Positions 17,296-50,264 of a stretch of 64,000 bases of DNA are shown here, piece after piece. Both the position numbers and the translations under genes were made by a program. Under the pieces are notes generated by a model. That model worked only from the letters and a program-made list of their open reading frames with translations. It had not been told where the DNA came from and did no database searches. This stretch comes from Scyliorhinus canicula (Eukaryota), in contig NC_052147.1 in NCBI RefSeq assembly GCF_902713615.1, positions 166,574,410-166,638,409 of the forward strand. The letters run 5' to 3'. Numbering within the stretch: the stretch's first letter is position 1; every line of letters begins with the position of its first letter.

Positions 17296-18195
17296 CTAGA
17301 AATCCCTCATGCGTCTGAAAGATCCGATAGTTGAGTTGTAGCCGCCCCAGTCACTGTATCTCTTGTATTCACCGGGTCTCATGAAGTACTGTCGGCCTCT
17401 GTAGTTGGGATGTTCATAGAAGTTCCAGTAACCGTCCATCACATGGCAGGAGTGGATGTCACGGTAACGGAAACGATCATAGACAGATGGACAGTCATCC
17501 ATGAATTCCATCATCTGTCCTCCAAAGTCAGGCCTCTCGTAAATCCTCATCTTGTAGTTTCCACCTCGGTACTGTAATAAAAATAAGATTACATTAATGA
17601 TTAAATAATAAATATACATTTGTTATACATAGGAAAAGAGAAACATTATGAAAGAAGGATTTAATGGAGCCCAGATGATGCATCAACAATGAGAGCAAAG
17701 CTGAGATAGTTTATTAACATTGATTCAATAGGTTGACTATCTTTGAAACTTGTTACAAAGAAGTAGCTCCTATCAAATGTTGAGCACACTGATCATTTTC
17801 TAAGGTTTAGAAATTGGACAGAAAATAAAAATCACCAAAAGCAACTTACATATGGGTAGGTGCGGCATGATCTGATGTTGTCATTGAATCCCATCCAGTG
17901 CTGGTAGTCAGGATATTCTCCCCTGCTCATAACATACTGGTATCCCATGTAATTGGGTTTCTCATACATCACCCACCAGTCACTCTCAACACGGACGGAG
18001 TTACAGCGGCTGAAGTAAGGGGACAGGTCAGCACAGTCACTGCTGCACTCATAGTGCCGACCCTGGAAGTTCCTGTCCTCGTAAAAGATGATCTGTGGAA
18101 AAAGTCACATGTTTCTAAATTAATAACTTGTCAAATTAGGCTATGAAGAATTCCAATTCAATATATAAACTCTGATTTATCCTTGCCTTCCCCAT
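17296..18195 (-). CDS. Gamma-crystallin G1 (shark gamma-S1-like), 175 aa; exons 18195-18187 (MGK), 18092-17850, 17571-17296
   Basis: [35 protein letters not shown]...[37 protein letters not shown]...FRRMRDF*; classic 9+243+276 nt gamma-crystallin exon structure, phase-0 introns, intron 1 GC-AG, intron 2 GT-AG; TATAAATA 18255-18262; AATAAA 17241-17246. Confidence 0.95.
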
Positions 18196-18254
18196 TTTGA
18201 GCTCAGAGTTTTAGCCGAGTAACTGACTATGCTTCACCACTTCACACAGTTTGG

Positions 18255-18356
18255 TATTTATATGTTGGACAGAATTGCCTCCCTGGACTGTACTTTTGTT
18301 ATTTTAATGATTGCAATAGTTTCAACTCAGCACAAAAGCAGCAAAACACATGTCAC
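18255..18356 (-). promoter_or_regulatory. G1 proximal promoter: TATA box, Sox-like AACAAA site, Maf half-site TGCTGAG
   Basis: TATAAATA 18255-18262; ATAACAAAAG ~18293-18302; TTTTGTGCTGAG (TGCTGAG 18326-18332); aligns with the G3/G4 promoter cores. Confidence 0.7.
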
Positions 18357-18840
18357 ATACACTAAATAGAACCATTTTAACGCACCTGTGTATCACTGAA
18401 TGTGTTTTGCCTCTGTCGCATTTTAATTGTTGTATAAAGATGGCAACAATGCATTGGAATCCATTGTGTTTCCGATACTGTACAGTGCTTTCACTGACAT
18501 TCCTGAAGAATTGGCATTACACATTCAACAGGTATGTTTCCAATAGTTCAGCCTCAGTGCTGAAGCTGACTGCAAAACCGATTACAATGCAGATGTACAT
18601 TTTCAGAATAATGTGCTTTATTTACAGCACTCTACATAATGGCTGATGCATAATTATCTGTGTTTTTTGCTTCCAGATTGTATTCCAAAGGTGATAGAAC
18701 CTTCAGCAATACATTTTAATTGTATGGGAATTAGATTTACATTAGATTTAGATTTATTGCCACGTGTATAGAGGTACAGTGAAAAGTATTGTTCTGAGTA
18801 CAGTCCAGGCACATCGCTCCATACATGAAAACATAGAACA

Positions 18841-19067
18841 GGCAGCACGTTGGCACAGTGATCAGCACAGATGTCTCATGGTGCCGAGGTCGCAGATTCG
18901 ATCCCGGTCCTGGGTCACTGTCTGTGTGGAGTTTGCACATTCTCCCCGTGATGGCGTGGTTTTAACCCCACAACCCAAAGATATGCCGGATAGGTGGTTT
19001 GACCATGTGAAATTGCCCCTTAATTGGAAAAAATTAATTGGGTACTCTAAATTTATTTTTAAAAATT
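18841..19067 (+). mobile_element. Short poly(A)-tailed HE1-like SINE, 13-bp TSD
   Basis: TSD AAAACATAGAACA (18828-18840) / AAAACATAAAACA (19068-19080). Confidence 0.85.
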
Positions 19068-19129
19068 AAAACATAAAACATACGATAAATGCATGATGTA
19101 AATACATAAACATAGACATCGGGTGATGC

Positions 19130-21290: not shown

Positions 21291-22238
21291 ATGGCAGGAG
21301 ATCCCAGACCCGTGTTATGCTCCTCGTGCTCAACGTGGGAGTTCAGGGACGCGGCCGATGCCCCTGACTCCTTCATTTCCGGAAAGTGTGTCCAGCTGCA
21401 ACTCCTGTTAGACCGCATGACGGCTCTGGAGCTGCGGATGGACTCACTTTGGAGCATCCGCGATGCTGAGGTGGTCGTGGATAGCACGTTCAGTGAGTTG
21501 GTCACACCGCAGATTAGGATTGGTGAGGGAGACAGGGAATGGGTGACTAAAAGGCAGAGAAAGAGCCGGAAGGTAGTGCAGGTGTCCCCTGCGGTCATCT
21601 CCCTCCAAAACAGGTATACCGTTTTGGATATTGTTGGGGGAGATAACTCACCAGGAGAAGGCAGTAGTAGCCAGGCTCATGGCACCGTGGCTGGCTCTGC
21701 TGTACAGAAGGGCGTGAAAAAGACTGGCAGGGCTATAGTTATAGGGGATTCAATTGTAAGGGGAGTAGACAGGCGTTTCTGTGGTCGAAAACGAGACTCC
21801 CGAATGGTATGTTGTCTCCCGGTTGCACGAGTCAGGGATGTCGCCGATCGGCTGCAGGACATACTGAAGGGGGAGGATGAACAGCCAGTTGTCGTGGTGC
21901 ATATAGGCACCAACGATATAGGTAAAAAACGGGTTGAGGTCTTACAATCAGAATTTAGGGAGTTAGGAGATAAGTTAAAAAGTAGGACCTCCAAGGTAGT
22001 AATCTCAGGATTCCTACCAGTGCCACGTGACAGTCAGATTAGAAATTCAAGAATAGTCAGAATGAATACGTGGCTTGAGAGATGGTGCAGGAGGGAGGGG
22101 TTCAGATATTTGGGACATTGGAACCGGTTCTGGGGGCGGTGGGAACATTACAAACCGGATGGTCTACACCTGGGCAGGACTAGAACCAATGTCCTAGGGG
22201 GTGCTTTTGCTAACACTGTTGGGGAGGTTTTAAACTAA
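21291..22238 (+). CDS. CR1 ORF1p (N-terminal Cys motif plus SGNH/GDSL esterase domain), open 315 aa
   Basis: CSSC...C; IVIGDSIVRG, VVVHIGTND, DGLHL catalytic blocks. Confidence 0.85.
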   Translation: MAGDPRPVLCSSCSTWEFRDAADAPDSFISGKCVQLQLLLDRMTALELRMDSLWSIRDAEVVVDSTFSELVTPQIRIGEGDREWVTKRQRKSRKVVQVSPAVISLQNRYTVLDIVGGDNSPGEGSSSQAHGTVAGSAVQKGVKKTGRAIVIGDSIVRGVDRRFCGRKRDSRMVCCLPVARVRDVADRLQDILKGEDEQPVVVVHIGTNDIGKKRVEVLQSEFRELGDKLKSRTSKVVISGFLPVPRDSQIRNSRIVRMNTWLERWCRREGFRYLGHWNRFWGRWEHYKPDGLHLGRTRTNVLGGAFANTVGEVLN

Positions 22239-22417
22239 TGTGGCAGGGGGATGGGAACCAGAATAGGAAGTTAGAGGTCAGTAAAGAGGCAGCAACTAAA
22301 GCCAGTAAGGTACTAGATAATAAACTCAATGTGACTAAGGGGAAGAGTAGACAGGGAAGAGATGATGAACACAAAGGGTCAGGAGGTCTGAGGTGCATTT
22401 GTTTTAATGCGAGAAGT

Positions 22418-23557
22418 TTGATAAGGTTCCCCACGGTCGGCTATTGCAGAAAATATGGAGGCTGGGGATTGAGGGTGATTTAGAGATGTGGATCAGAAAT
22501 TGGCTAGTTGAAAGAAGACAGAGAGTGGTAGTTGATGGGAAATGTTCAGAATGGAGTTCAGTTACAAGTGGCGTACCACAAGGATCTGTTCTGGGGCCGT
22601 TGCTGTTTGTCATTTTTATAAATGACCTAGAGGAGGGCGCAGAAGGATGGGTGAGTAAATTTGCAGACGACACTAAAGTTGGTGGAGTTGTAGACAGTGT
22701 GGAAGGATGTTGCAGGTTACAGAGGGACATAGATAAGCTGCAGAGCTGGGCTGAGAGGTGGCAAATGGAGTTTAATGTGGAGAAGTGTGAGGTGATTCAC
22801 TTTGGAAAGAATAACAGAAATGCGGAATATTTGGCTAATGGTAAAATTCTTGGTAGTGTGGATGAGCAGAGGGATCTCGGTGTCCATGTACATAGATCCC
22901 TGAAAGTTGCCACCCAGGTTGATAGGGTTGTGAAGAAGGCCTATGGTGTGTTGGCCTTTATTGGTAGAGGGATTGAGTTCCGGAGCCATGAGGTCATGTT
23001 GCAGTTGTACAAAACTCTAGGATGGCCGCATTTGGAGTATTGCGTACAGTTCTGGTCGCCTCATTATAGGAAGGACGTGGAAGCTTTGGAACGGGTGCAG
23101 AGGAGATTTACCAGGATGTTGCCTGGTATGGAGGGAAAATCTTATGAGGAAAGGCTGATGGACTTGAGGTTGTTTTCGTTAGAGAGAAGAAGGTTAAGAG
23201 GTGACTTAATAGAGGTATACAAAATGATCAGAGGGTTAGATAGTGTGGACAGCGAGAGCCTTCTCCCGCGGATGGAGGTGGCTAGCACGAGGGGACATAG
23301 CCTTAAATTGAGGGGTAATAGATATAGGACAGAGGTCAGAGGTGGGTTTTTTACGCAAAGAGTGGTGAGGCCGTGGAATGCCCTACCTGCAACAGTAGTG
23401 AACACGCCAACATTGAGGGCATTTAAAAATTTATTGGATAAGCATATGGATAAGGGCATAGTGTAGGTTAGATGGCCTTTAGATTTTTTCCATGTCGGTG
23501 CAACATCGAGGGCCGAAGGGCCTGTACTGCGCTGTATCGTTCTATGTTCTATGTTCT
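22418..23557 (+). mobile_element. 5'-truncated CR1 nested in the host endonuclease, TSD AAGT
   Basis: RT C-half ORF 22444-23466; (TTCTATG)n tail; AAGT at 22414-22417 and 23558-23561; host CFNARS|VAGKADEL restored on removal. Confidence 0.9.
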
Positions 23558-24110
23558 AAGTGTAGCAGGTAAGGCAGATGAACTTAGGGCTTGGATTAGT
23601 ACCTGGGAATATGATGTTATTGGTATTACTGAGACTTGGTTGAGGGAAGGGCAGGACTGGCAACTGAATATCCCAGGGTATAGATGCTTCAGGAGGGATA
23701 GAGAGGGAGGTAGAAGGGGTGGAGGAGTTGCATTACTAGTCAGAGATGATATCACCGCTGTGATTAAGGAGGACACTTTGGAGGATTCGAGCACTGAGGC
23801 AATATGAGTGGAGCTCAGAAATAGGAAGGGTGCAGTAACATTGTTAGGACTTTACTACAGGCCTCCCAAAAGCGAGCATGAAGTAGAGGTACAAATATGC
23901 AGACAGATTATAGAAAAATGTAAGAGCAATGGGGTGGTTGTGATGGGAGATTTTAACTTTCCCAACATTGAATGGGATTCGTGTAGTGTTGTAGGCGTAG
24001 ATGGAGCAGAGTTTGTAAGGAGCATCCAGGAGAGTTTTTTAGAGCAGTATGTAAATAGTCCAACTTGGGAAGGGGCCATACTGGACCTGGTGTTGGGGAA
24101 TGATCCCGGC

Positions 24111-26164
24111 CATAGAACATAGAACACTATAGCGCAGTACGGGCCCTTCGGCCCTCGATGTTGCGCCGACCTGTGAAACCATCTGAAGCCTATCTGACCT
24201 ACACTATTCCATTTTCATCCATATGTCTATCCAGTGACCACTTAAATGCCCTTAAAGTTGGCGAGTCTACTACTATTGCAGGCAGGGCGTTCCACACCCC
24301 TACTACTCTGAGTAAAGAAACTGCCTCTGACATCTGTCCTATATCTATCACCCCTCAATTTAAAGCTATGTCCCCTCGTGTTGGTCATCACCATCCGAGG
24401 AAAAAGACTCTCACTGTCCACCCTATCTAACCCTCTGACTATCTTATATGTCTCTATTAAGTCACCTCTCAGCCTTCTCCTCTCTAACGAAAACAACCTC
24501 AATTCCCTGAGCCTTTCCTCGTAAGACCTTCCCTCTATACCAGGCAACATCCTAGTAAATCTCCTCTGAACCCTTTCCAAAGCTTCCACATCCTTCCTAT
24601 AATGTGGTGACCAGAACTGCACGCAGTACTCCAGGTGCGGCCGCACCAGAGTTATGTTCAGCTGCAGCATGACCTTGTGGTTCCGAAACTCAATCCCCCT
24701 GCTTATAAAGGCTAGCACACCACCTGCCTTCTTAACAGCCCTATTAACCTGGGTTGCAACTTTCAGGGATTTATGTACCTGGATGCCGAGATCTCTCTGT
24801 TCATCTACACTACCAAGAATCTTGCCATTAGCCCAGTAATCTGCATTCCTGGTACTCCTTCCAAAGTGAACCACCTCACACTTTTCCGCATTAAACTCCA
24901 TCTGCCACCTCTCAGCCCAGCTCTGCAGCTTATCTATGTCCCTCTGTATCCTATAACATCCTTCAGCACTATCTACAACTCCACCGACCTTCGTGTCATC
25001 TGCAAATTTACTAACCCATCCTTCTACACCCTCTTCCAGGTCATTTATAAAAATGACAAACAGCAGTGGCCCCAAAACAGATCCTTGCGGTACACCACTA
25101 GTAACTGAACTCCAGGATGAACATTTGCCATCAACCACCACCCTCTGTCTTCTTTCAGCTAGCCAATTACTGATCCAAACCGCTAAATCACCTTCAATTC
25201 CATACTTCCTTATTTTCTGCAATAGCCTACCGTGGGGAACCTTATCAAACGCCTTACTGAAGTCCATATACACCACATCAACAGCTTTACCCTGATCCAC
25301 CTGTTTGGTCACCTTCTCAAAAAACTCAATAAGGTTTGTGAGACATGACCTACCCTTCACAAAACCGTGTTGAGTATCGCTGATCAACTTGTTCTTTTCA
25401 AGATGATTATAAACCCTATCTCTTATAACCTTTTCCAACATTTTACCCACAACCAAAGTAAGGCTCACAGGTCTATAATTACCAGGGTTGTCTCTACTCC
25501 CCTTCTTGAACAAGGGGACAACATTTGCTATCCTCCAGTCTTCCGGCACTATTCCTGTCGACAAAGACGACATAAAGATCAAGGACAAAGGCTCTGCAAT
25601 CTCCTCCCTGGCTTCCCAGAGAATCCTAGGATAAATCCCATCTGGCCCAGGGGACTTATCTATTTTGACATTTTCTAAAATTGCTAACACCTCCTCCTTT
25701 TGAACCTCAATTCCATCTAGCCTGGTCGACTGAACCTGAGTGTTCTCCTCGACAACATTGTCTTTCTCCAGTGTAAACACGGACGAAAAATATCCATTTA
25801 ATGCTTCCCCTATCTCCTCTGATTCCACACACAATTTTCCACTACTATCCTTGATTGGCCCTAATCTTACTCTAGTCATTCTTTTGTTCCTGATATACCT
25901 ATAGAAAGCCTTAGGGTTTTCCTTGATCCTATCCGCCAACGACTTTTCGTGTCCTCTCCTCGCTCTTCTTAACTCTCCCTTTAGGTCCTTCCTGGCTAAC
26001 TTGTAACTCTCAAGTGCCCTAACTGAGCCTTCATGTCTCATCCTAACATAAGCCTTCTTCTTCCTCTTGACAAGTGCTTCAACATCCTTAGTAAACCACG
26101 GTTCCCTTGCTCGACAACTTCCTCCCTGCCTGACAGGTACATACTTATCAAGGACACGCAGTAG
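24111..26164 (-). mobile_element. 5'-truncated CR1 (same young family as 7633-11900), nested
   Basis: ORF 24242-26224 nearly identical to 8186-10177; tail CATAGAACATAGAAC at 24111. Confidence 0.92.
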
Positions 26165-27790
26165 TGCACACTTGAAATGTGGGAGTCTTGTAAGGAAAGA
26201 TTGATTAGAGTGCAGGACAGACATGTCCCTGTGAAAATGAGGGATAAAAATGGCAAGATTAGGGAACCATGGATGACGGGTGAAATTGTGAGACTAGCTA
26301 AGATGAAAAGGGAAGCATACATAAGAACGAGGCAACTCAAAACTGATGAAGCTTTGGAGGAATATCGGGAAAGTAGGACGAATCTCAAACGCGCAATAAA
26401 GAGGGCTAAAAGGGGTCATGAAATTTCTTTGGCTAACAGGGTTAAGGAAAATCCCAAAGCCTTTTATTCGTATATAAGGAGAAAGAGGGTAACTAGAGAA
26501 AGGATTGCCCACTCAAAGACAAAAGAGGGAATTTATGCGTGGAGTCAGAGGAAATGGGTGAGATTCTTAATGAGTACTTTGCATTAGTATTCACAAAGGA
26601 GAGGGACAGGACGGATGTTGAGGCTAGGGATGGATGTTTAAAAACTCTAGGTCAAGATGTCATACAGAAGGGGGAAGTTTTGGGTATTCTAAAACACATT
26701 AAGGTGGACAAGTCCCCAGGACCGGATGGGATCTATCCCAAGTTACTGAGGGAAGCGAGGGTCGAAATAGCTGAGGACTTAACAGATATCTTTGCAGCAT
26801 CCTTGAGCACGGGTGAGGTCCTGGAGGACTGGAGAATTGCTAATGTTGTCCCTTTGTTTAAGAAGGGTAGCAGGGATAATCCAGGGAATTATAGACCTGT
26901 GAGCTTGACGTCAGTGGTAGGCAAACTGTTGAAGAAGATACTGAGGGATAGGATCTATTCACACCTGGAAGAAAATAGACTTATCAGTGATAGGCAGCAT
27001 GGTTTTGTGCAGGGAAGGTCATGTCTTACAAACCTAATAGAATTCTTTGAGGAAATGACAAAGTTAATTGATGAGAGATGGGCTGTAGATGTTATATACA
27101 TGGACTTTAGTAAGGCATTTGATAAAGTTTCCCATGGCAGGTTGATGGAAAAAGTGAAGTCATATGGGGTTCAGGGTGTACTAGCTAGATGGATAAAGAA
27201 CTGGCTGGCAACAGGAGACAGAGTAGTGGTGGAAGGGAGTGTCTCAAAATGGAGAAGGGTGACTAGTGGTGTTCCACAGGGATCCGCGTTCGGACCACTG
27301 TTGTTTGTGATATACATAAATGACCTTGAGGAAGGTATAGGTGGTCTGGTTAGCAAGTTTGCAGATGATACTAAGATTGGTGGAGTTGCAGATAGCGAGG
27401 AGGACTGTCAGAGAATACAGCAAAATATAGATAGATTGGAGAGTTGGGCAGAGAAATGGCAGATGGAGTTCAATCCAGGCAAATGCGAGGTGATGCATTT
27501 TGGAAGATCTAACTCAAGAGCAGACTATATGGTCAATGGAAGAGTCCTGGGGAAAATTGATGTACAGAGAGATCTGGGAGTTCAGGTCCATTGTACCCTG
27601 AAGGTGGCTGTGCAGGTCGATAGAGTGGTCAAGAAGGCATACAGCATGCTTGCCTTCATCGGACGGGGTATTGAGTACAAGAGTCGGCAGGTCATGTTAC
27701 AGTTGTATAGGACTTTGCTTAGGCCACATTTGGAATACTGCGTGCAGTTCTGGTCGCCACATTACCAGAAGGATGTGGATGCTTTGGAGA

Positions 27791-30964: not shown

Positions 30965-31469
30965 AGAAAGTAGAAGAGTTTCACCAGGATGTTGCCTGGT
31001 ATGGAGGGTGCTAGCTATGAAGAAAGGTTGCGTAGATTAGGATTGTTTTCATTGGAAAGACGGAGGTTGAGGGGAGACCTGATTGAGGTCTACAAAATTA
31101 TGAGAGGTATGGACAGGGTGGATAGCAACAAACGTTTTCCAAGAGTGGAGGTGTCAATTACAAGGGGTCACGATTTCAAGGTGAGAGGGGAAAAGTTTAA
31201 GGGAGATGTGCGTGGAAAGTTTTTTACGCAGAGGGTGGTGGGTGCCTGGAATGCTTTGCCAGCGGAGGTGGTAGCGGCGGGTGCGATAGCATCATTTAAG
31301 ACGCATCTGGACAGATATATGAACGGGTGGGGAACAGAGAGAAGTAGAACTTGGAAAATAGGCGCCAGGTTTAGATAAAGGATCTGGATCGGCGCAGGCT
31401 GGGAGGGCCGAAGGGCCTGTTCCTGTGCTGTAATTTTCTTTGTTCTTTGTTTCTTTGTTCTTTGTTCTT

Positions 31470-34871: not shown

Positions 34872-35150
34872 AATAATAATAATAATCGTTATTATTGTCA
34901 CAAGTAGGCTTACATTAACACTGAAATGAAGTTACTGTGAAAATCCCCTAGTCGCCACACTACAGCACCTGTTCAGGTTAACAAGCCCACCATTCAGGAT
35001 TTACGCAAGAAACTGGAGCACCCGGAGGAAATCCACGCAGACACGGGGAGAACATACAGTCTCCGCACAGACAGTGACCCAAGCCGGGATTCGAATCCGG
35101 GTCACTGGAGCTGTGAAGCTACAGTGCTAACCACTGTGCTATTGTGCCAC
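34872..35150 (-). mobile_element. HE1-like SINE head with a third, (ATT)n-ending tail
   Basis: Head GTGGCACAATAGCACAGTGGTTAGCA; tail CACAGTAACTTCATTTCAGTGTTAATGTAAGCCTACTTGTGACAATAATAA shared with 46430-46625 and 50703-50880. Confidence 0.8.
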
Positions 35151-37303
35151 ATCTAGCATATGCATCAGCTCTGGGTAAACCTAGTCCTGAGGCTCAGCAA
35201 CTGTCTGGGACCCAGCAGACCTCCGACTGCTATCTCGCCTGGGTGTTCCTGCTTCCACCTGATGTGCATCGGCAGCTGTGTGGCGCTCATCAGAATGTGC
35301 CCCAAAAGCCTGACCACTACTGTCGCCCACCGAGGTGTGTGTCTCTGTGCTGGTGGAGGGTGGGATGACAGCTGTGCCGTGAATATGGTGGGCTCCTCAG
35401 AGCTCCCCTTCAAGGGGTTCTGATGGGAAGCAGGGCAGGGATCCACCCTGGATAGGACGGCACCATCGGATGAGGATCCTCCGGGAGAATGGAAAAGTGG
35501 TCAGTGGGAGGATGGGTCATTCTGTGTGGCATTAACAACTCACATGTGACAGGTCAGTAGGGTGGGGGCTGGTGGATACTCACCTCTACACCTTACACCA
35601 AACTCTACATTGGTGATTATTCTGCTCTGTTCTGGACCAACCTGTGAACTCCAGAGTCTGGTACCCTATTGCCCGCCTGGGCCCTCTTTCATCTGCTGTG
35701 TGCCAATGTCTCCTGCGGGGGCACAGAGGGCTGAATGCTTCATTCAACATGGGGACAGAGGTGGGGGGAGGAGGTAGTGAGAATGGGGGTTGATGGAAGC
35801 CTAGGGTGATAGAGAATATGGGGCGGAGGGAGTATGGGATAAGAGGAATATGGGGGCTGGGGAATTTGAGTTGTGGAGTGCATGTAGGGTGGGGAGCTTG
35901 GGGAGTATGTGGAGTGGGGAATTTGGGGGTTGGGGAGTATGGGGGGGATGGAGAGTTTTTGGGGAAATGGGGAGTTTGTGACGGGCCAGTGTGGGCGGCA
36001 CTGCCGGACATGGATGGACCGGGGCACGGAATGATGCAAGGTGACGGCTATGCTAGGCGCATGCTCGGGGATGTCGGGGGGGGGGGGGTCGTGGGCAGGG
36101 CCAGTACCATGGGGCCGGGGTCAACCCAAAGGGCTCGGTGGAGGTCGTTGACATTCTTACGGCACTGGGTGGCGCTTCCCCAGGTGACGGCGCTGGCACC
36201 TCCTCCCAGGCGACACTGGCTGCCCTGCTGCTGACCCTCTGAGCCCCTCGGGAGAACAGGGCATCCTGCCTGGTCACGACTGGATCCAACACTCTGGCCA
36301 GGTCGCCATTCTCGAATCGTGGGGCTGGTCTCCTCAGCGGCACGGCTACGGGCTGTGTGGGATTTGCTCTTCAGGAGGGGTTTACGTGCTGCTCTCCCTT
36401 GTCAGCAGGGGGCTGGCGAGTACGGTGCCAGCAGATCAGCCAGTGGGACAGTCATTTGCAGTATGAAACATGTGGGGCCTCGTTAAGTGGACTAATTAAC
36501 AGTTTTTAGCGGTGACAGCCACACCGGGCCAAGAGTCGGGAGAGTCGGGAAACTCGCTGCAGCTCCTGCTCATTCCCACACTTCGAATCTTTTCCATCAA
36601 TTCGCGCCCAATGGTTGAATGAATTTCTTCAATCCAATCATCCCATTATCTACTTACACAATGCACAGGGTTGACAAGCAGCACGGATCGCGCCGGAAAA
36701 CATGGCGCCGGCCATGCTGGAACCCTAACCCGCCCACCCCAACCCCACAGCTCACCCCCTGGCCTCCCCCCTACCCCTCCCCCAACCTGAAGAGAAGTTG
36801 CCTGGCCAGCGGCATGGATCCCGGAGAAGCGTGGTGGCATTGGACGCTGTGTGCAGCCAGCACGCCAGATTCCCAACCACTGGGATCACACGTGGCCCGC
36901 GCCATAGGGAGCTCGGCCCATTGGGGTGGAGTATCATGGGTCAAGCCGGCTGATGTCGTGCCAACTGCGTGCAGCGTGCATCATGCTCATGCCGATTTGG
37001 AGTGGTCGGAGCATCACAAACTGGTCGGAGCATCACAAACTGGTGTCAAATTGGCACTTACACCGAATCCGGTGTCGGAAGCCATTCTCTGCCTGATCAT
37101 TGTTCCCGATTTCAGCGTCGGGCTATGGAGAATCCCGCCCCCTCTTCCTGTTATTAAATTTACTCAGCTTTACTCCAATTGACAATAAAATGATCATTAT
37201 CTTTTGCATCTATTCTTATCTATCCCATCTAACCAACCAGCAATATTTTACATAATTTTTCAAATGCATAATTACTACAAATATGCTTTTCCCTCTATCA
37301 CAG

Positions 37304-37579
37304 TACCGAGGCGGAAACTACAGAATGAGGATTTACGAGAGGCCTGACTTTGGTGGACAAATGATGGAATTCATGGATGACTGTCCATCCGTCTATGATC
37401 GTTTCCGTTACCGTGACATCCACTCCTGCCATGTGATGGACGGTTACTGGACCTTCTATGAACATCCCAACTACAGAGGCCGACAGTACTTCATGAGACC
37501 CGGTGAATACAAGAGATACAATGACTGGGGCGGCTTCAACTCAACTATCGGATCTTTCAGGCGCATGAGAGATTTCTAA
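37304..37579 (+). pseudogene. Gamma-crystallin G2: orphan exon 3 (open frame); exons 1-2 not found in the window
   Basis: TATCACAG acceptor, [16 protein letters not shown]...FRRMRDF*, AATAAA at ~37629; 11/276 nt differences from G3 exon 3; no [11 protein letters not shown] exon seen upstream on +. Confidence 0.75.
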
Positions 37580-38848
37580 ATTGTTCTTCACAAATGTTTT
37601 TCTGATCTTCTGGCCAATTTGTCAGCAGAATAAATATACATAATTTAACCGTGTTTACTCTTAATTGATTGCTTGGATTGTTAGGGGAATTGCCTGTAAC
37701 GTGAATATGATGGAATTTTCTCTTTGGCAATTGCACAGGTTTGAGGATGACTTACTTCCCCACTAAAAATGAATTCCTAGGTGACTGACAAGTCCAATGC
37801 ACAACCTACTGTCTCTGGTGAGGCAGATGGCGATTAGAGGAGTGGGTGGATGGGATGACTGGGTCTCTATGCGCTCTGGGCACAATTCCTTCAGAGCATG
37901 AGATGAACCAATTTCATTATATTACAAGTCTAAGTCTCTTCTCTAAAAGGAGTCAGAATCTGTAACGTTGAAGTCAAAAGCACAAATTCCATAAAATCAT
38001 AAAATCTTGCATAATTATTAAATTATAATCTAAATAACAGCCAATGTCTGTATTCTTCTGGGTTTGCATCTAATCATAATGCTAGGAGTGACAGCAGTGA
38101 GAGCCAAATCGAGTTCAGCTATTGGCCGAAGAATCCCCGTTCGCACCGCTTTTGCAATACTCCGTCCCCTCAAAAACAGCGTACAATGGCAGCTGTCCCA
38201 CAGATGGGTGCTTCGTCAGCCTGATCTAGCAGTGCACAGACCCCGCCTTCTGATGTCAGCACGCTGCCCTAGAAACTGACTTTTTTTAATGGATGGAGTC
38301 TTCCTGCAATAATGGTGGGTCATGAAGGTCAGCTGATGTGGGTCGCAAAGGTCGGCAAGCAAGGGTCGCGAAGGTCGGCTTATGGTAAAAAATACCTGGG
38401 AAAAGAATTTGGACAAACACTGCTCTATGCTGTGATTGAAGTAATTGGTTTCAGGAATATTTCTTTTCTTTTCCTCACCACCTACTGACACAGACTGTGT
38501 TGTATACCTCTCTTAACATGTTTCAGACACACCCTGACTTAAAAAAGATAGGTTGCTTCATATCTCCAATAAAGTGACTGGCATCAAACAACCTTGAATC
38601 ACATCAAATTCTTTTCAAAACTGCCAAGCAAAGACATAATTTAATAATTACACAAGATTTTCTGATTTCATGGATTTTTTGAGTCATAGAATGGTACAGC
38701 ACAGACCATTCAGGTCCTCCTGTCTCTTTTAAATACCCGATCAAATAGGTCTTCTTCTCATTGCCCCACATAACACTGCAAATATTTTCTCTTCCTAAAT
38801 AGAAAGACTTTCCTAGTCTTATAGACTAAAATAGAAAGGCTTTACATC

Positions 38849-39072
38849 TGTAATAAATCCACAGAGGCAGAAGCCCCTTCACTAGAATCCCTTTTATTAA
38901 CAAAACCAACATCAGCAGAACCAGGTGCATTCAGCTTGCTGTCCACACTGGGAGTGCAGAGGATCTGACACTCCTGGTTCTATACAGAGAAAGGGGTTCT
39001 GTGATTGGGCCACTAATCAGGGAACTCATATTCTAATTGGCCAATCTTAAAGGCTTGGTCTAAGTCACTACA
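38849..39072 (-). mobile_element. Short solo LTR (224 bp)
   Basis: TGTAAT...ACTACA; imperfect TSD ACATC/AAATC; AATAAA on minus strand. Confidence 0.6.
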
Positions 39073-39119
39073 AAATCCACCTGAGTAATTCTGAAGTGGA
39101 GACACTCTTGTAATGTGGA

Positions 39120-39435
39120 AAAATCAGCAGTAATTTGTGCAACAAACAATGTGAATGGTAATGACAGGAAAACCTCTCGTGACATTATTTCGGTGATAAA
39201 TGTTGGCCAGGGCACTGAGGTCAATTCCTCTGTTTTTCAAAATATTGCTGTGGGATCTTGTACGTCCACCTAAAAGGGCAAAAAGAGCTTGAGTTTAATG
39301 TCTCATCGGAAAGATCCGGCAATATAGCACCCCCTCAGGACTGCAGTGGAGTCTCAGGCTGAAGTTTTGAGTTCAAGTCCTGGAGCAAGACATGAACTTA
39401 CAACCTCAGATTCAGAAGTAAGACTGGGCCATGGT
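39120..39435 (-). mobile_element. Deu-domain SINE (SacSINE1/AmnSINE-like) relic
   Basis: TTGGCCAGG..GGGATCTT.TACGTCCACC..GTTTAATGTCTCATCGGAAAGA..AGCACCCCCTCAG.ACTGCA matches the Deu-SINE pattern from memory. Confidence 0.65.
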
Positions 39436-39449
39436 TTTAAAATCTAATT

Positions 39450-40470
39450 CCCTTGTTGAAGTTATGATGGGATCTGCTTGCATCGTATTGTGTTCCAGAT
39501 AATGACAATATTCTGCATAAAAGATAATTCTCCTCACCTCCCCTCTAATTCTTTTAAATTGGTGTCCTCAGGTTACCCAATCCTCCTGCCATTGAAACCG
39601 CTCTATCTTCATTCACTCTATCAAACGGCTTCATGATTTTGAACACCTTTATTATAATCTCCCCTGAACTTTCTCTGCTCTGAGAAGAATCAACCCCAGC
39701 TTTCTAATGTCTTTGTATAATTGAAATCACACTTCTAAGAAATCTTTCTAGTATACCTCTTCCTCGTCCCTTACCACCCATCCCAAAGTAAATTCAATGG
39801 GTTGATCTTGTTTTGAACATAGACAAACAATGATTCACAGAATCATTACAGCCCCCTCATGATTTTGAACACCTCGATCAAATTTCTTCTTTGCCTTCTT
39901 CTTTCCAAGGTGAACAATTGCAACCTCTCCAATATATCCTCGTAACTGAAGTTTCTCATCTCTGGAACCATTCTTGTAAATCTCTTCCTCCACTCTCTCT
40001 AATGTGTTCACATTTTTCCTATAGTGATGAACCCAGAACTGTACACAATATTCCAGATGGGGTCTAATTAGTGGCATGTGTAAGTTCAGCATAACCTCCT
40101 TGCTCTTGTATGTGATGTTCTCTGTTGGGTCTATCTGGATGCTTCGAGAAGTAGTGTTAACAAGGAACATCAAGATGATTTATTTTACATTACTAAATTA
40201 AAAGATTCTAACCAGTCAACAAGGAATAAATTATTAAATAAAACAATATGATATCTCTTATAACAGAACTCTGTGCTATGCATTTAATCTCTCTAATGCC
40301 TGACAACCTTCTCCCAGAATCCCAGAAGTCACATGATATTTATATCACTGCTCCTTATCGCCATCTAGTGGTGAGAAGTATTATTACCTTATTGTTAACC
40401 CCTTGTATTCATTACAATACTAATTCTATGTCCTATTAATAAAGCCCAGAATACTACATGCTTTATTACC
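39450..40470 (-). mobile_element. Old CR1 3' fragments, with a putative solo LTR at 40111-40416
   Basis: YKSKEVMLNL..LIRPHLEYCVQFW ORF; insert bounded by TGTGATG...CATTACA, TSD not clear. Confidence 0.6.
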
Positions 40471-40479
40471 TGATCCCTC

Positions 40480-42240: not shown

Positions 42241-42794
42241 ATTGTCTCCCATGTTCTTCCTAGCAAAATGCATCACCTCATAATTCTCCACATTGAACTT
42301 CATCTGCCATGTGTCTGCCCACTCTGCCAACTTTCTATTTCCTTTTCAAATTCCACACTGTCTCCTCACAGTTTACAGTACTTCCAAATTTTGTGTCACC
42401 TGCAAACTTTCAAATTGTCCCCTGCACACCAAGCTCTACATCATTAATATGTATCAGGAGAAGCAAGGGTCCCAATACCAATCCCTAGGGAACACCATTA
42501 CAAACCTTTCTCCAGCCTGAAAAGTATTCATTGTTTCCTATTACTCAGCCAATTTTGTATCCACATTACTACTGTCCCTTCTATTCCATGAGCCATAACA
42601 TTTCTCACAAGTCCGTTGTGTGGCACTGTATCAAATGCCTTTTGGAAGTCAATGCACAACACATCTAGATTCTACAGATCCAAACTGTTATATGGTCCTG
42701 GATCACTGGTTGTGCCAGAATGAAAGAACAGCAATGAAAGTTAGAATGCCATTTCCAAGTTACACCTAACAACAGAGGTTATATTTCAAGATAC

Positions 42795-43178: not shown

Positions 43179-43299
43179 GATACCAATTACAATTTCACTT
43201 TAGTGGCCTGCCCCATGGGTGTGTGAGAAGCAATAAGACAGGAACTATGGGATCACACCAGCCCACACCAGGAAAAACATCAGGATTGAATTTTTCTCA

Positions 43300-45102
43300 G
43301 AATCAGTTAACAGAATCCTCCATTTTTTTTGTCTAAGTGCGATGGCAGGCAGTTCCGATGGCATCATTCCCGCTGGCTGGAATAGCATGAACTCGCTCTT
43401 GATTCCATGCTTGGAGCCTAATCAATTATGCATGAGTGGGTATCTCTCCGAATCACCTGGTGGGTCGGGATCTGATTCATCCGCCTGCTGTCAATGCGCA
43501 GGTTTAAAAGTCCCAGGGCCATACTTAGACACCAGTGCAACAAATACATCTCACTGTCTCCAGCCCACCTGTCCTCAGGAGACCATCCACGATGTCTAGA
43601 ACCCAGAAGCAAAAGGCGACCTCCTCCAAGAAGATGGCAACACCCTGCTTCAGTCATCAGGTCTTCAAAACTGTGGTGAGCGCTGGTGCTTCGCATCGTT
43701 TGACAACATCTGACTCCTCCCACAGTAGCACTTACCACTGGCCATCTGGGTGATTCCTGCATGCGAGCTGGCCATTCTATTACACGGTCCCATCGAACCC
43801 CTAGGGGGCAGAGGTGAAGCTGATTGTGGGGGGAGGTGGGGGGCATATGCAATGCAGAGGGATGGACGAGGACAGCGGAGCGTTGAGCACTGGCTGAGCT
43901 GGGATTCCTTGCCAAGTCCACCCCAACATCCTCCCATCTTCCCGCCCCCCCCCCCCCCTAGTGCCCACTCTGCAACCGGCTCAGACCAGGCCATCCCTCA
44001 CACCCTTCTGTCAAAGCACTGAGGCTGGTTGAAATGTTGTGAACAAGTGTCTATTGTGAAACAGTGAATATTTATCTACAGGTTTATGCCCTAACCCCTA
44101 ACACTATACTGTGTGCTGCATCTGTGTGCCAAAGTAACAGGTGTCTACCTTTCTGGCCTTACAGGCCCTAACACTATGTTTAGGTGGGCCCCAGATGGTA
44201 CATCAGGAGTGGAGGCGGCCTGCTGTGGTTCTCGTCCTGTGACCTGAATCCCCTTTGGCAGCCGGCTTCTGGAGCGACTGAGCCTGGGTGTACCCGGCTG
44301 CTGCTCGAGTGTCCCAGCTGGCGTGGTGCCACCCTGTAATGCCCATTACCTATTGGATGCGCCAGATACAGGAGGGGGAGAGTCCGAGGTTATGTTGTCT
44401 TCCGGCACGACTCGTGCGGGAGTCACAAGCACAGGCCCCATCACCTCCTCCTCCCTCGGGGTGCCCAATGGCCCCCGGGCTACCTGGGCAGCATGGCGAT
44501 GCAGTGCATAGCATTGCTGCCTCACGTTGCCGAGATCCCAGGTTCAATCCCGGCTCCGGGTCACTGTCCGTGTGGAGCATGCACATTCACCCCGTGATTG
44601 TGTGGGTTTTGCCCCCACAACCCAAAGATGCAGCACACATGGAATGGCCATGCTAAATTGCCCCTTAATTGGAAAAAATGAATTGGGTACTCTGAATTTA
44701 TATTTTAAAAAAGCAGCGCTAACCCCTGAGGCTCCTCTGCCACCTGGCACTGCCAGTCCTGGACGCCCGCACTTGCCCCGGACCACGCCCCCACAGTGCA
44801 CCCCCGCGGATTGGCCTTTCCCTGACTGTAGAGGCACTGGACTGAGTCCACAGCCACCACGCCGAGTTCCCGACGGGTGAGACCATGAGAAACCCGGCCG
44901 GTCGGGGGCGGAGCTTCGGGGGGCGAGCCTCAGGCAATGTCTTGAGGTCGTCGATATGTGGCGTGGTGTACTCCTCAAGTACGCCGGTTTGGAGGGGGCG
45001 GAGCATCGCAAAAGCGGCGCTACCCCAGATTTGGTTGGAAACTTGGATTCTCCGGCCTGTAGCAGGACGCGATTTTGGCGTTGGCGACGGAGAATCCAGC
45101 CC
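43300..45102. mobile_element. GC-rich Harbinger-like relic with an internal poly(A) SINE (44485-44712, +)
   Basis: Terminal GGAGAATCCAGCCC ~45089-45102; similarity to 33140-33700. Confidence 0.5.
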
Positions 45103-46625: not shown

Positions 46626-46819
46626 AATTTGGAGAATCTAGCCCCATTCCTGTTTATTTACAGCGACTACATACATGTTGGGACCTCTGAACGAGGTTGG
46701 AATTTTTGCTCCCTCACGATCTCTGTTACTCAATCATGTGATGTTACATCGTCATTACTTCAGCATTATGCACTTCTGATATGCTTCTCTTTACCCCACA
46801 TTAATCTGCATGATTTTAT

Positions 46820-47910
46820 CGAATCATAGAATGATTATAGCACAGGAATTGGCCATTTGGCCTGTCATGTCCGTGCCTACTCTCTCCATGAGCAACTCAC
46901 CGAGTCACACTCCGCTGCCCTTTCCTGTCACCCAGCAAATTAGTTTTCACTTCAAATAGTTATCTAATTCCCTTTGAAAGCTTTGATTGAAACTGCTTCC
47001 ACCACACTCTCAGATAGAATATTCCAGGCCTTAACCACTTGCTGTGTGAAAACCTTTTTTCCCCTGTTGCTGTTATTTTTCACCAATCACCTTTAATCAG
47101 TGTCCACTGCTTCTGCTGCCAATGAAAAAAAAGGTTGACTAGACTTCTTATGATCATGAACACTGCCTTCAAATCTCTGCTTAATCGTCCCTTCACCAAG
47201 GAGAACATTCCCCATCTGTACACGTGGCTGAAGTTTTTCATCCCTGGAAACATGCTGGCGAATCTTTTTTGAAACCTCTGATGCCTTCACATTTTGTCCA
47301 AAGAATGGTGACCAGAATTCGACACAATACTTCGACTGAGGACAAAGCAGGCTCATCATAATTTCCGTGTTTTTATACTCAGTGCTCCTAATTATAAAGC
47401 CAAGGAACTCGTATGCTTTAGAAACTGCTTTCTTAACCTGCCCTGCCATCTTCAATGATTTGTACACATGCACCCCAGATCCCTCTTCCCCTGCCCACTC
47501 CTATGCTTGATTGTTTATTGCATCTCCCTGTTCTTCCAACCATAATGAATCACTTCATACTTTTCGGCATTAAATTACATCTGCCATATACTCACCCATT
47601 CAATTGGCCTGACTAAGGTCATTTAAAGTTATACACGATCCTTCTCATGGCTCACAATTCGCAAATTTTGTGTTATCTGTAAATTTTTAAATTGTGCCCT
47701 GCACAGTGAAGCTAAGGTCATTAATATTGATCAGGATAAGCAGTTGCCCTAACTCTGTGCCCTGGGGAACCCCATCATATCTTATTCCTGTGTGACAAAG
47801 ATCGCCACTATTCTGTCTCTTACTGCTCAGTCAACATTGTGCTCCTTTGACCACTGTCCCTTTCATTCCATGGCCCTCATTTGCTGACAAGTTTGTTATG
47901 TGCTACTTTA
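46820..47910 (-). mobile_element. Old CR1 fragment upstream of G3
   Basis: ORF 47093-47473 VYKSLKMAGQVKKAVSKAYEFLGFI..YCVEFWSP. Confidence 0.7.
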
Positions 47911-48194
47911 TCAATGAAAACTCCAAACAATAAAAAAATAACATTGCAGATGGAGTCTGAAAGTACAGAAGTAATAGATATGACAATGAGCAAAGCAATT
48001 AGTGTGGGTTTTTCTTCTTCACGTTGGTTAATTTAGGAACTGAGCTGGCTGGGTATACTTTGGGAATAGGTTCTAGGAAATAGATTTTGTAACCATTGCT
48101 GTTTTGAAACAGTTTGAATGTAGAAAGCACGATGGACTCTCCCTCTTTGTTTTGACACGACAAATAAAATGAAACTAAAGCAAAGTGAAGAGAA

Positions 48195-48320
48195 TCAGTG
48201 ACATGTCAAGCAACATGTCAAGTGATGTGTTTTGTTCTCTTTTTGCTGATGTTCAGCATCAAATCATATGAATAACAAAGGAACAGAGTAGAGAGCATTT
48301 TGTACAGCATATATATATCA
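48195..48320 (+). promoter_or_regulatory. G3 proximal promoter: ACATGTCAAG tandem, palindromic MARE-like TGCTGA-TGT-TCAGCA, Sox site AACAAAG, TATA
   Basis: 48201-48222; 48244-48258; 48274-48280; TATATATA ~48310-48317. Confidence 0.7.
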
Positions 48321-48376
48321 CACTGTACAATGTGTTGCTCTGTTAAAGCAGTTACTCATCTAACTGTGAGCTCAAA

Positions 48377-50264
48377 ATGGCAAAGGCAAGAATCAAATTG
48401 TTTTTTTCTCAGGATTTAAGAGTTCTTGATTACTGTCGCTAGATTTTCAGTTTATTAATTTATCTTGTCTTTTTCCACAGATTATCTTTTACGAGGACAG
48501 GAACTTCCAGGGTCGGCACTATGAGTGCAGCAGTGACTGTGCTGACCTGTCCTCTTACTTCAGCCGCTGTAACTCCATGCGTGTCATGAGTGACTGGTGG
48601 GTGATGTATGAGAAACCCAATTACATGGGATACCAGTATGTTCTGAGCAGGGGAGAATATCCTGACTACCAGCGCTGGATGGGATTCAATGACAGCATCG
48701 GCTCATGTCGCACCTACCCATATGTAAGTTTGTTGTTTACACATTCTGCTCTGATTGACATCAAATTGACTCACTGAGTGGATGAATTCTAGAGTCATTT
48801 AAATTCAATACACATTTCGATTTGAAAAAGCTTATTGAATTGGAGGTTTAGAATGTTGATTTAGACTGTGAATCTGTTGGATTTAATTTTTCATGCAAGT
48901 TGTTATTGTTACATAGTGGGCTGTTTACTTATTCTAACTTGTTGTGATATTTCAAGGCCAGTTTTCTGATGAAATACCTCAGTTTCAGTGTGAGCATAGC
49001 ATCGAGACACTTAGTCCCACTTTATATTGCAACAAAAATACATAAAAGTGTGTTCAGACAGACATCATGTGCTCAATAATAATTCACAGCATTAGACTTC
49101 TAGTCAAATTATTCTATTGTTTATGTTGCCCTCACACATTCTTCCCATTTCCCATAAACATATAATGGTGAGGAAGTTAATATGTTCCAGACAATCACAG
49201 ACATTGCTGAGTAAATGGTTCCCAGTCCACCAGCCCATTATCTGTGACAATGTCCTTACCTCAAGCACATTTATACAATGCATTACTGCTCAGCAGAACG
49301 ATGGGGTGGGCGTTTTCGGCTATGCCCTCCCAGCGACTGGAAATTCCCGTCCAAGGTCAACAGACCTTTACATCGTCCTAGTCCCGTCCATGGCGATCTT
49401 GCAGCGGGTATGGCCAAAAACCTTGGGGCTATAACTTCCTGGCTCCACAGCATAGAATGTGAGGAGTTTGCCAAAGATATGCTGGGGAATTCTTCTCAGA
49501 TGTCCACAGCTTTGTGTGGCAATTGTGCAGAAGTCCGAACATTCCCCAGACAATTGAGTTGGAAATCGCCTAACAAAATTTTAAAGTTACTAACTTTGGA
49601 TGGATCTGCCAGTTTTACATCAATAACTACCTGACTGGACCCAACCTGCTCCCTCCTCCCTGCCCACCCCACCCAGGAGCTTACCCAACCTAACTTGATC
49701 CAACCACCCCTCCACCACCCCACCACCGCCCCAACCCTTCCCCCGCGGTGGAGGAGAACCGCCCCCACCTCCTGGGGTTCACCAGAAACCCCAACATCCC
49801 TGGAGTGGATTTGATCCACCTTGTCCTCCCTCCCACCGCCCCACCTTTTCCGAAACTTTGCTTAATCCTCATTGGTAATGAGATGATACTTCAGGTATTC
49901 CCTTCACACCTACCAGCTCCATTTCTATGCCTATATCAAATATATAATTCATGCTATCGTCACAAATATGCTTTTCCTTCTATCACAGTACCGAGGTGGA
50001 AACTACAAAATGAGGATTTACGAGAGGCCTGACTTTGGAGGACAGATGATGGAATTCATGGATGACTGTCCATCTGTCTATGATCGTTTCCGTTACCGTG
50101 ACATCCACTCCAGCCATGTGATGGACGGTTACTGGACCTTCTATGAACATCCCAACTACAGAGGCCGACAGTACTTCATGAGACCCGGTGAATACAGGAG
50201 ATACAGTGACTGGGGCGGCTTCAACTCAACTATCGGATCTTTCAGACGCATGAGGGATTTCTAG
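48377..50264 (+). CDS. Gamma-crystallin G3 (shark gamma-S1-like), 175 aa; exons 48377-48385 (MAK), 48481-48723, 49989-50264
   Basis: Open frame across three exons; intron 1 GC-AG (95 nt), intron 2 GTAAGT...TCACAG (1265 nt); AATAAA 50314-50319. Confidence 0.95.

What the first reader, a model, noticed from the sequence alone, without database searches (positions are those of the whole stretch)
17296..50264. Exon-restricted gene conversion: exon relationships contradict flank relationships
Seen (counted by eye): exon 3 of G3 differs from the inverted G1 at only 5/276 nt (1 synonymous, 4 replacement: C/S, N/T, K/R, Y/F), yet their introns 2 (278 vs 1265 nt) and 3' flanks barely align. G3 and G2 share the acceptor region and more than 2 kb of alignable 3' flank, yet differ at 11/276 nt (7 silent). 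Inference: coding exons are repeatedly homogenised by non-allelic conversion, even between opposite-strand copies 32 kb apart, while a few amino-acid differences persist. This could maintain a set of near-identical but non-identical crystallins.
Basis: partly seen in the sequence, partly recalled or inferred. Interest (0 to 1): 0.7.

Follow-up and report, generated by a model that had tools for sequence, protein, structure and literature searches.

The report
Exon-3 gene conversion among shark gamma-crystallins
In a shark (probably small-spotted catshark) lens gamma-crystallin cluster, the last coding exon of old gene copies has been overwritten by copying between copies while introns and flanks kept their separate histories; this is a well-known process, but it means that copies which look like recent duplicates may be ancient.

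Summary
Exon 3 of G1 (17296-17571, minus) and G3 (49989-50264) differ at 5/276 nt (1 silent, 4 replacement). G2 (37304-37579) and G3 differ at 11/276 (7 silent). G1 and G3 lose homology within about 67 nt upstream and 3 nt downstream of the exon. G2 and G3 share the acceptor (24/25 nt) and about 2.4 kb of patchy 3' flank.

Exon-limited gene conversion is supported for exon 3, mainly by sevengill shark (Heptranchias) copies I fetched.
- The immediate flanks of G1's exon 3 group with two Heptranchias genes (98/99 support); a G1+G3 flank clade is rejected (AU p 0.00016).
- The exon 3 sequences of G1, G2 and G3 cluster by species (96/93).
- G1-G3 silent divergence in exon 3 (0.02) is 6-13 times below every other pair with comparable promoter divergence.
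- A PHI-like test finds mosaicism in exon 3 but not in exon 2.

The within-window three-copy "contradiction" is not significant alone (AU p 0.19). G2's greater distance is private silent changes. Exon 2 shows no recent homogenisation. A direct G1-G3 exchange and selection for the persisting residues are not shown.

This is a new member of a known kind (mammalian gamma-crystallins). First readers noted the same pattern in other windows of this cluster; I did not check those.

The parts
17296..17571 (-). G1 exon 3 (276 nt including TAG). It is the homogenised tract, 98.2% identical to G3 exon 3.
   Evidence: Pfam PF00030 E 1e-34
17572..17849 (-). G1 intron 2 (278 nt). It is barely alignable with G3 intron 2. 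It aligns end to end with the ends of intron 2 of Heptranchias H_g and H_h.
17850..18092 (-). G1 exon 2 (243 nt). It has 13 differences from G3 (3-4 silent, 9-10 replacement) and is not recently homogenised.
18093..18445 (-). G1 intron 1 (GC donor), 9-nt exon 1 (18187-18195) and proximal promoter with TATA box. The promoter is 63-71% identical to G3, no closer than to Heptranchias copies (72-77%).
17166..17295 (-). G1 3' UTR and flank (AATAAA at 17246-17241). It is 55-63% identical to G3 and groups with Heptranchias H_g/H_h.
37304..37579 (+). G2 exon 3 (TAA stop), intact, with no exon 2 anywhere upstream in the window. It carries 6 private derived changes (5 silent).
37277..37303 (+). G2 acceptor region shared with G3 (24/25 of the last 25 nt).
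37580..39986 (+). G2 3' UTR (AATAAA at 37629-37634) and flank, collinear with the G3 flank in patches of 60-77% identity.
48377..48723 (+). G3 exon 1 (48377-48385), intron 1 with GC donor (48386-48480) and exon 2 (48481-48723).
48724..49988 (+). G3 intron 2 (1265 nt).
49989..50264 (+). G3 exon 3 (276 nt including TAG).
50265..55323 (+). G3 3' UTR (AATAAA at 50314-50319) and flank, homologous to the G2 flank. It is interrupted by a LINE reverse-transcriptase ORF (51638-53242) and a SINE-like repeat (54603-54844).
63421..64000 (+). G4 promoter, exon 1 (63671-63679), intron 1 (63680-63807) and the first 193 nt of exon 2, cut by the window end. G4 is a young tandem duplicate of G3 and serves as a control pair: promoter 95.6% and exon 2 95.3% identical. 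The last ~58 nt of its intron 1 are 93% identical to G1 and absent from G3.

Best explanation
These are three-exon lens gamma-crystallin genes in a large tandem or inverted cluster, probably that of the small-spotted catshark. The G1 locus and the G2/G3 loci are old duplicates. Their introns, UTRs and flanks belong to lineages that had already separated before this shark and the sevengill shark Heptranchias diverged.

After that divergence, exon 3 (276 nt, encoding Greek-key motifs 3-4) was overwritten by non-allelic gene conversion, either between these loci or from other members of the cluster. As a result, all three exon 3 copies now carry the same species-specific silent changes, and G1 and G3 differ at only one silent site.

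Inferred, not shown: the exchange is confined to the exon because the flanking sequence is too diverged to support heteroduplex extension. This leaves a ~276-nt island of homology that perpetuates itself.

Exon 2 of G1 and G3 did not take part in the recent event. Donor, direction and number of events are not resolved.
For: 1. Flank tree (60 nt of intron plus 90 nt downstream, 151 columns): G1 groups with Heptranchias H_g/H_h at 98/99, and G2 with G3 at 99/97. AU rejects a window-only clade (p 0.043) and a G1+G3 clade (p 0.00016).
2. Exon 3 tree: G1+G2+G3 form a clade at 96/93. AU rejects the flank grouping G1+H_g+H_h (p 0.027).
3. blastn: the G1 locus aligns with H_g continuously through 210 nt of intron 2, exon 3 and 127 nt downstream (83%). 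G1-G3 homology ends 67 nt upstream and 3 nt downstream of the exon.
4. Pair table: 20 pairs with promoter p-distance 0.19-0.33 have exon-3 silent p-distance 0.13-0.26. Even the recent duplicates H_g-H_h (promoter 0.05) have 0.10. G1-G3 has promoter 0.29 but silent distance 0.02.
5. HKA-like Fisher tests against the interspecific pairs give p 0.001-0.004.
6. Three silent sites and one replacement site are fixed in all three window copies against all Heptranchias copies.
7. PHI-like mosaic test: exon 3 p 0.0004-0.003, and 0.005-0.011 in Heptranchias alone.
8. Control pair G3-G4: promoter 95.6% and exon 2 95.3% identical, so real young duplicates show no exon/flank contrast.
9. The last 25 nt of intron 2 in G1 match Heptranchias genes at 20-22/25 but G3 at 16/25.
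Against: - Only one outgroup species could be used, and its copies are not proven one-to-one orthologues.
- The flank grouping that was tested in exon 3 was named after seeing the tree.
- With third codon positions only, the rejection weakens to p 0.074.
- The promoter and concatenated non-coding trees are unresolved, and W monophyly is not rejected there (p 0.10).
- The PHI-like test could be helped by clustered multi-base changes in two hypervariable codon runs.
- No read-level check of the G1 and G3 exon sequences was made, so a polishing artefact is not formally excluded.
Confidence: 0.8

Rival explanations
1. Purifying selection alone explains the pattern. Exons stay alike because of protein constraint plus codon or mRNA constraint at silent sites in very highly expressed lens genes, while unconstrained flanks saturate. 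No sequence exchange is needed.
For: - The exon 3 peptide is 85-93% conserved across sharks.
- Silent divergence is modest everywhere in the family: 0.04-0.26 even between species.
- Exon 2 silent divergence is the same within and between species.
Against: - Silent sites are not frozen. Window-versus-Heptranchias exon-3 silent distance is 0.17-0.26, against 0.02 for G1-G3.
- Three silent changes are shared by all window copies although their flanks are of different trans-species lineages.
- The exon tree clusters by species with third positions alone (90/89).
- There is a mosaic signal in exon 3.
Confidence: 0.07
2. G1 and G3 are recent, lineage-specific duplicates (birth-and-death evolution) whose non-coding parts were then scrambled by deletions, insertions and fast drift. 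This is how the catshark genome paper reads the species-specific clades.
For: - PMC11979771 reports a monophyletic group of 30 catshark copies and interprets it as duplications after the split from the white shark lineage.
- G3-G4 and H_g-H_h are real young duplicates.
- The concatenated non-coding tree weakly joins G1 and G3 (67/55).
Against: - G1's intron 2 and 3' flank are recognisably orthologous to Heptranchias H_g/H_h and not to G3. A G1+G3 clade in the flanks is rejected (p 0.00016).
- G1-G3 promoter divergence (29%) is at least as large as that between the window and Heptranchias (23-28%).
Confidence: 0.05
3. Assembly or polishing artefact: short reads from about 40 near-identical exons were mis-mapped during polishing and flattened paralogue-specific variants in the exons only.
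For: The pattern (exons alike, flanks untouched) is what such an artefact would give.
Against: - RNA-like contigs of an independent 2011 run match G2 exon 3, with its private variants at 51, 57 and 87, exactly (X25).
- The copies keep distinct variants (5-12 differences).
- The same exon/flank contrast and the same mosaic signal are seen in the independent Heptranchias assembly.
- A catshark protein in the database has an exon-3 peptide identical to G1's.
Confidence: 0.04
4. RNA- or cDNA-templated conversion: a processed crystallin transcript served as the template, which would explain tract ends at exon borders.
For: The 5' end of the homogenised tract lies within 4 nt of the splice acceptor.
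Against: - A cDNA template would also carry exon 2 and the 3' UTR. Exon 2 is not co-converted (silent distance 0.094 against 0.02), and the UTR is 55-63% identical from the first base after the stop.
- The introns are retained.
Confidence: 0.02

Closest known systems
Concerted evolution of the mammalian gamma-crystallin cluster (CRYGA-F): den Dunnen et al. [quoted passage not shown] Only the titles were seen, in reference lists. The contents are from my own memory.
   Same: The same protein family and the same three-exon layout (9-nt exon 1, one two-motif domain per exon), in a clustered gene family, with homogenisation by gene conversion. As I recall the rat paper, the third exon evolves in concert while the second diverges, which is what I see here (exon 3 converted; exon 2 not, and rich in replacement changes).
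   Different: This is a cartilaginous fish, with a cluster reported at about 40 genes rather than 6, and it includes inverted copies. Here the age of the loci is anchored by flank orthology to a distantly related shark.
Catshark gamma-crystallin cluster as described by Mayeur et al. 2024 (Mol Biol Evol 41:msae246, PMC11979771).
   Same: Very probably the same locus: 40 genes in 1 Mb of chromosome 2, recent copies about 5% apart, and one crystallin-like non-coding RNA pseudogene expressed in the eye.
   Different: The paper reads species-specific clades as recent duplications from a 'duplication hotspot' and does not mention gene conversion (0 occurrences). The evidence here says that at least G1 versus G2/G3 are old loci with a converted exon 3.
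Exon-limited conversion between other tandem paralogues (a textbook case is the human fetal globin genes HBG1/HBG2, from my own knowledge). In this same genome, ISG15-like paralogues were reported by an earlier follow-up of this scan (s1-200277).
   Same: A short island of near-identity inside otherwise diverged duplicates, with incongruent exon and flank trees.
   Different: Here the tract coincides with a single 276-nt exon, and it joins copies whose flanks are trans-specific lineages.

Membership tests
Non-allelic gene conversion / concerted evolution | In the tract, paralogues within a species are closer to each other than to any copy in another species. | tested here: met
   Exon 3: the window clade has 96/93 support, and 90/89 with third positions only. 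There are 5-12 differences within the window against 18-26 to Heptranchias.
Non-allelic gene conversion / concerted evolution | Sequence flanking the tract shows an older, different history (trans-species orthology of flanks). | tested here: met
   In the flank tree G1 groups with H_g/H_h at 98/99. AU rejects the window clade (p 0.043) and G1+G3 (p 0.00016). blastn gives a continuous G1/H_g alignment through intron 2 and the 3' flank.
Non-allelic gene conversion / concerted evolution | Silent-site divergence in the tract is significantly below neutral divergence of the same pair, and is not explained by constraint seen between species. | tested here: met
   Silent sites 1/50 against promoter 66/226, p 6e-6. 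HKA-like test against the interspecific pairs gives p 0.002-0.004. G1-G3 is an outlier among 21 pairs. This holds for G1-G3 exon 3 only. G2-G3 (0.12) and exon 2 (0.094) are not outliers.
Non-allelic gene conversion / concerted evolution | Mosaic (recombinant) site patterns among paralogues. | tested here: met
   My own PHI-like permutation test: exon 3 p 0.0004-0.003; exon 2 not significant (0.17-0.36).
Non-allelic gene conversion / concerted evolution | An identified donor and recipient, and tract end points. | tested here: inconclusive
   Only 3-4 of about 40 cluster genes are in the window. Site patterns hint that G1 was a recipient over sites 9-228, and that the G2/G3 type resembles the G1/H_g type at sites 229-246. 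The G1-like 58 nt at the end of G4's intron 1 may be a tract edge outside an exon.
Non-allelic gene conversion / concerted evolution | GC-biased signature of conversion. | not tested
   The four window-fixed changes show no obvious direction (T, T, C, A against C, C, T, T). That is too few sites for a test.
Beta/gamma-crystallin (gamma type) | Two Crystall (PF00030) domains, one per exon, with a 9-nt first exon. | tested here: met
   PF00030 E 1e-30 to 1e-35 for each exon-2 and exon-3 peptide. Gene structure was read. The nearest proteins are shark gamma-crystallins, up to 97% identical to Scyliorhinus canicula.

The most novel reading that the evidence does not exclude
The species-specific clades of gamma-crystallins reported in sharks, and by extension in other aquatic vertebrates, are largely products of concerted evolution of exon 3 on ancient, positionally conserved loci, rather than of repeated recent bursts of duplication. 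In addition, a few paralogue-type residues (Asn50 and Tyr78 of the G1 type, shared with its Heptranchias flank relatives) have been held against conversion since before the two shark lineages split.
Probability: 0.35. Interest if true: 0.55.

Novelty: new member of a known kind. Interest (0 to 1): 0.4.

Why it matters
Gene trees built from coding sequence are used to date crystallin duplications. The catshark genome paper, for example, argues for 30 copies younger than the split from the white shark, and for a 'duplication hotspot'. If exon 3 is homogenised by conversion, such trees underestimate the age of the loci and overestimate turnover. Flank-based orthology would then be the right yardstick.

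The finding also gives a concrete case in which one domain-encoding exon (motifs 3-4) evolves in concert while the other (motifs 1-2) is free to diverge. That bears on how a set of near-identical but not identical lens proteins is maintained.

Tried and rejected
Two Heptranchias proteins were not on record. Only Heptranchias could therefore serve as the second species.
- The three-copy within-window topology test is not significant (AU p 0.19).
- The promoter-only tree and the concatenated non-coding tree are star-like and do not decide orthology. Only the immediate exon-3 flanks, after adding H_g and H_h, gave a resolved answer.
- Global alignments with cheap gaps inflate the identity of unrelated non-coding DNA, so I rely on blastn extents and ML trees instead.
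- The first sequencing-run run failed because the service was busy.
- The Plotnikova 2007 paper is not held. Searches for fish or shark crystallin gene conversion found nothing relevant. Kappe et al. 2010 does not mention conversion.
- A cDNA-templated conversion and a polishing artefact were considered and judged unlikely (see the rival explanations).
- G2 as a dead, neutrally drifting exon was rejected. Its private changes are 5 silent to 1 replacement (P 0.001 under neutrality), and it appears in RNA-like contigs.


Full report
**What is in the window.** tblastn and blastn with the exon 3 ORFs find three copies of gamma-crystallin exon 3 and three copies of exon 2. I read the sequence to set the gene models.
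- G1 is complete, on the minus strand: exon 1 18195-18187, exon 2 18092-17850, intron 2 of 278 nt, exon 3 17571-17296.
- G3 is complete, on the plus strand: exon 1 48377-48385, exon 2 48481-48723, intron 2 of 1265 nt, exon 3 49989-50264.
- G4 starts at 63671 and is cut by the window end.
- G2 is an exon 3 alone (37304-37579). No exon 2 lies anywhere upstream of it in the window.

Each exon peptide is a Crystall domain (PF00030, E 1e-30 to 1e-35). The nearest database proteins are shark gamma-crystallins. G1 is 97% identical to two Scyliorhinus canicula proteins, one of which has an identical exon-3 peptide. The window is not Heptranchias perlo, whose exons are about 91-92% identical to it.

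- G1 and G3 exon 3 differ at 5/276 nt: one silent change plus C42S, N50T, K70R and Y78F. G2-G3 differ at 11/276 (7 silent, counting TAA/TAG). G1-G2 differ at 12.
- G1-G3 homology ends 67 nt upstream and 3 nt downstream of the exon. Their introns align only weakly over the last ~120 nt. Their 3' flanks share nothing but a dispersed SINE-like repeat.
- G2 and G3 share 24 of the last 25 intron bases. Their 3' UTRs are 77% identical, and collinear patches of 60-76% identity run over ~2.4 kb, interrupted on the G3 side by a LINE and a SINE.
- By partition, G1-G3 identity is: promoter 63-71%, intron 1 68-71%, exon 2 94.7%, end of intron 2 54%, exon 3 98.2%, 3' UTR 55%.

**Is it selection or exchange?** I fetched four stretches of the Heptranchias perlo crystallin cluster (L001-L004) and extracted nine copies.
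- Silent sites of exon 3 are not frozen. Silent p-distance between the window and Heptranchias is 0.17-0.26, and within Heptranchias it is 0.13-0.26.
- Even the young duplicates H_g-H_h, whose promoters are 95% identical, have 0.10.
- G1-G3 has 0.02 although its promoters differ by 29%. That makes it the single outlier among 21 pairs.
- Fisher tests of silent sites against the promoter, the intron end or the UTR give p 6e-6 to 4e-10. HKA-like tests against the interspecific pairs give p 0.001-0.004.
- The pair G3-G4 is a useful internal control. Real young duplicates show the same divergence in promoter (4.4%) and exon 2 (4.7%), so there is no built-in exon/flank contrast.

**The decisive test: exon tree against flank tree, with a second shark.**
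- In the 60 nt before and 90 nt after exon 3 (151 aligned columns), G1 groups with Heptranchias H_g/H_h (98/99) and G2 groups with G3 (99/97). The AU test rejects a clade of the three window copies (p 0.043) and a G1+G3 clade (p 0.00016).
- blastn agrees. The G1 locus aligns with H_g from the promoter into intron 2, and again continuously through 210 nt of intron 2, exon 3 and 127 nt of 3' flank.
- In exon 3 itself the three window copies form a clade (96/93; 90/89 with third positions alone). The flank grouping G1+H_g+H_h is rejected there (p 0.027; p 0.074 with third positions).
- Three silent sites and one replacement site are fixed in all window copies against all Heptranchias copies.

So the G1 and G2/G3 loci separated before the two shark lineages did, and their exon 3 sequences were made alike afterwards. 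A PHI-like permutation test finds mosaic site patterns in exon 3 (p 0.0004-0.003; 0.005-0.011 in Heptranchias alone) but not in exon 2.

- With the three window copies alone, the exon tree (G1,G3),G2 has weak support, and the flank topology is not rejected (AU p 0.19). Polarised by Heptranchias, G2 simply carries six private derived changes (five silent) plus TAA, and each possible pairing has about one synapomorphy.
- G2-G3 silent distance (0.12) is ordinary for the family.
- Exon 2 of G1 and G3 (silent 0.094; 9-10 of 13 differences are replacements) is as diverged as interspecific pairs and shows no mosaic signal. The recent event was therefore exon-3 specific.
- A direct G1-G3 exchange across 32 kb and opposite strands is not shown. 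The catshark cluster is reported to hold 40 genes in 1 Mb (PMC11979771), and other windows of this genome carry more copies (first-reader notes).
- The 4:1 excess of replacement differences is not significant (p 0.13). However, Asn50 and Tyr78 of G1 recur in its Heptranchias flank relatives H_h and H_g, which is compatible with retention.

**Mechanism.**
- Shown: discordant histories of a 276-nt exon and its immediate flanks, species-specific shared silent changes, and mosaicism.
- Inferred: non-allelic gene conversion whose heteroduplex cannot extend into flanks that are about 55-70% identical. The exon therefore remains a self-perpetuating island of homology.
- A cDNA template is unlikely, because the UTR and exon 2 were not co-converted.
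- One possible tract edge outside an exon exists. The last ~58 nt of G4's intron 1 are 93% identical to G1, while the rest of G4's upstream region is G3-like, and G3 lacks that stretch.

**Comparison with what is known.** Gene conversion in gamma-crystallin clusters is established for mammals (den Dunnen 1986; Plotnikova 2007). I saw only the titles; from memory, the rat study found the third exon concerted and the second divergent, as here. The catshark genome paper describes this cluster, reads species-specific clades as recent duplications, and never mentions conversion. I found no report of conversion for shark or fish crystallins in the held library. The finding is therefore a new member of a known kind, with the practical consequence that duplication dates from coding trees are suspect.

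**Side result on G2.** RNA-like contigs (run X1) cover G2's exon 3 and its own 3' UTR up to about 37642, near the poly(A) signal. They give no cover over 35946-37127 or after 37719. A contig end at the acceptor (37304) carries the last 18-21 nt of a crystallin exon 2. An independent 2011 run (X25) has contigs that match G2's private variants exactly. G2's private changes are 5 silent to 1 replacement (P 0.001 under neutrality). G2 is therefore not a silently decaying relic. It is either part of a transcript with distant upstream exons, or the crystallin-like non-coding RNA mentioned in PMC11979771. The contigs cannot tell paralogues apart at the junction.

Noticed in passing
window 18186-18181 (G1), 48386-48391 (G3), 63680-63685 (G4); L001, L003: Intron 1 of all three genes starts with a GC donor (AAG|GCAAG). 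The same GC donor is present in Heptranchias H_a, H_b, H_c, H_g and H_h, while H_f, H_i and H_j have GT. It is therefore a conserved GC-AG intron in one subfamily.
   Followed up: partly
window 37304-37650: G2's orphan exon 3 and its own 3' UTR are present in RNA-like contigs (X1 UTR contig depth about 4460, ending near the poly(A) signal). A contig end at the acceptor carries an exon-2 end. No exon 2 exists upstream in the window. G2 may be the eye-expressed crystallin-like non-coding RNA reported for the catshark.
   Followed up: partly
window 32400-35755: Run X1 also covers about 3.3 kb upstream of G2 at an even depth of about 105-117, then nothing until the G2 acceptor. This could be an intron or an upstream part of the G2 transcript, or an unrelated transcript.
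   Followed up: no
window 63750-63807 versus 18150-18093: The last ~58 nt of G4's intron 1 are 93% identical to G1's and are missing from G3, while the rest of G4's upstream region is G3-like. This is either a conversion tract edge in an intron, or a deletion in G3 between two TTATTAATTTA repeats.
   Followed up: partly
window 17850-18092 versus 48481-48723: Exon 2 differences between G1 and G3 are mostly replacements (9-10 of 13). Across the family, pN/pS is about 0.4-0.5 in exon 2 against about 0.2 in exon 3. The N-terminal domain is the freer one.
   Followed up: partly
window 21291-31378 and 51638-53242: There is a pile of LINE fragments with reverse-transcriptase ORFs between G1 and G2, including an uninterrupted 1011-aa endonuclease-plus-RT ORF (27896-30931, minus). 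Another RT ORF is inserted in the G3 3' flank.
   Followed up: no
window 14939-15176, 18841-19078, 44483-44713, 54603-54844, 58064-58299 and others: A SINE-like repeat of about 235 nt occurs in many copies at 72-88% identity. It is the only thing the G1 and G3 3' flanks share.
   Followed up: no
window 42245-42634 versus 47523-47914: A 68% match between sequence 4.7 kb downstream of G2 and the region 460-860 nt upstream of G3 suggests a remnant of the tandem duplication unit, possibly the upstream region of a lost gene.
   Followed up: no
L003 655-2589 and 15235-17189: Heptranchias H_g and H_h are young tandem duplicates (promoter 95%, UTR 93%) that nevertheless differ at 13 sites of exon 3. 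One carries Tyr78 and the other Asn50, the two states combined in the window's G1.
   Followed up: partly
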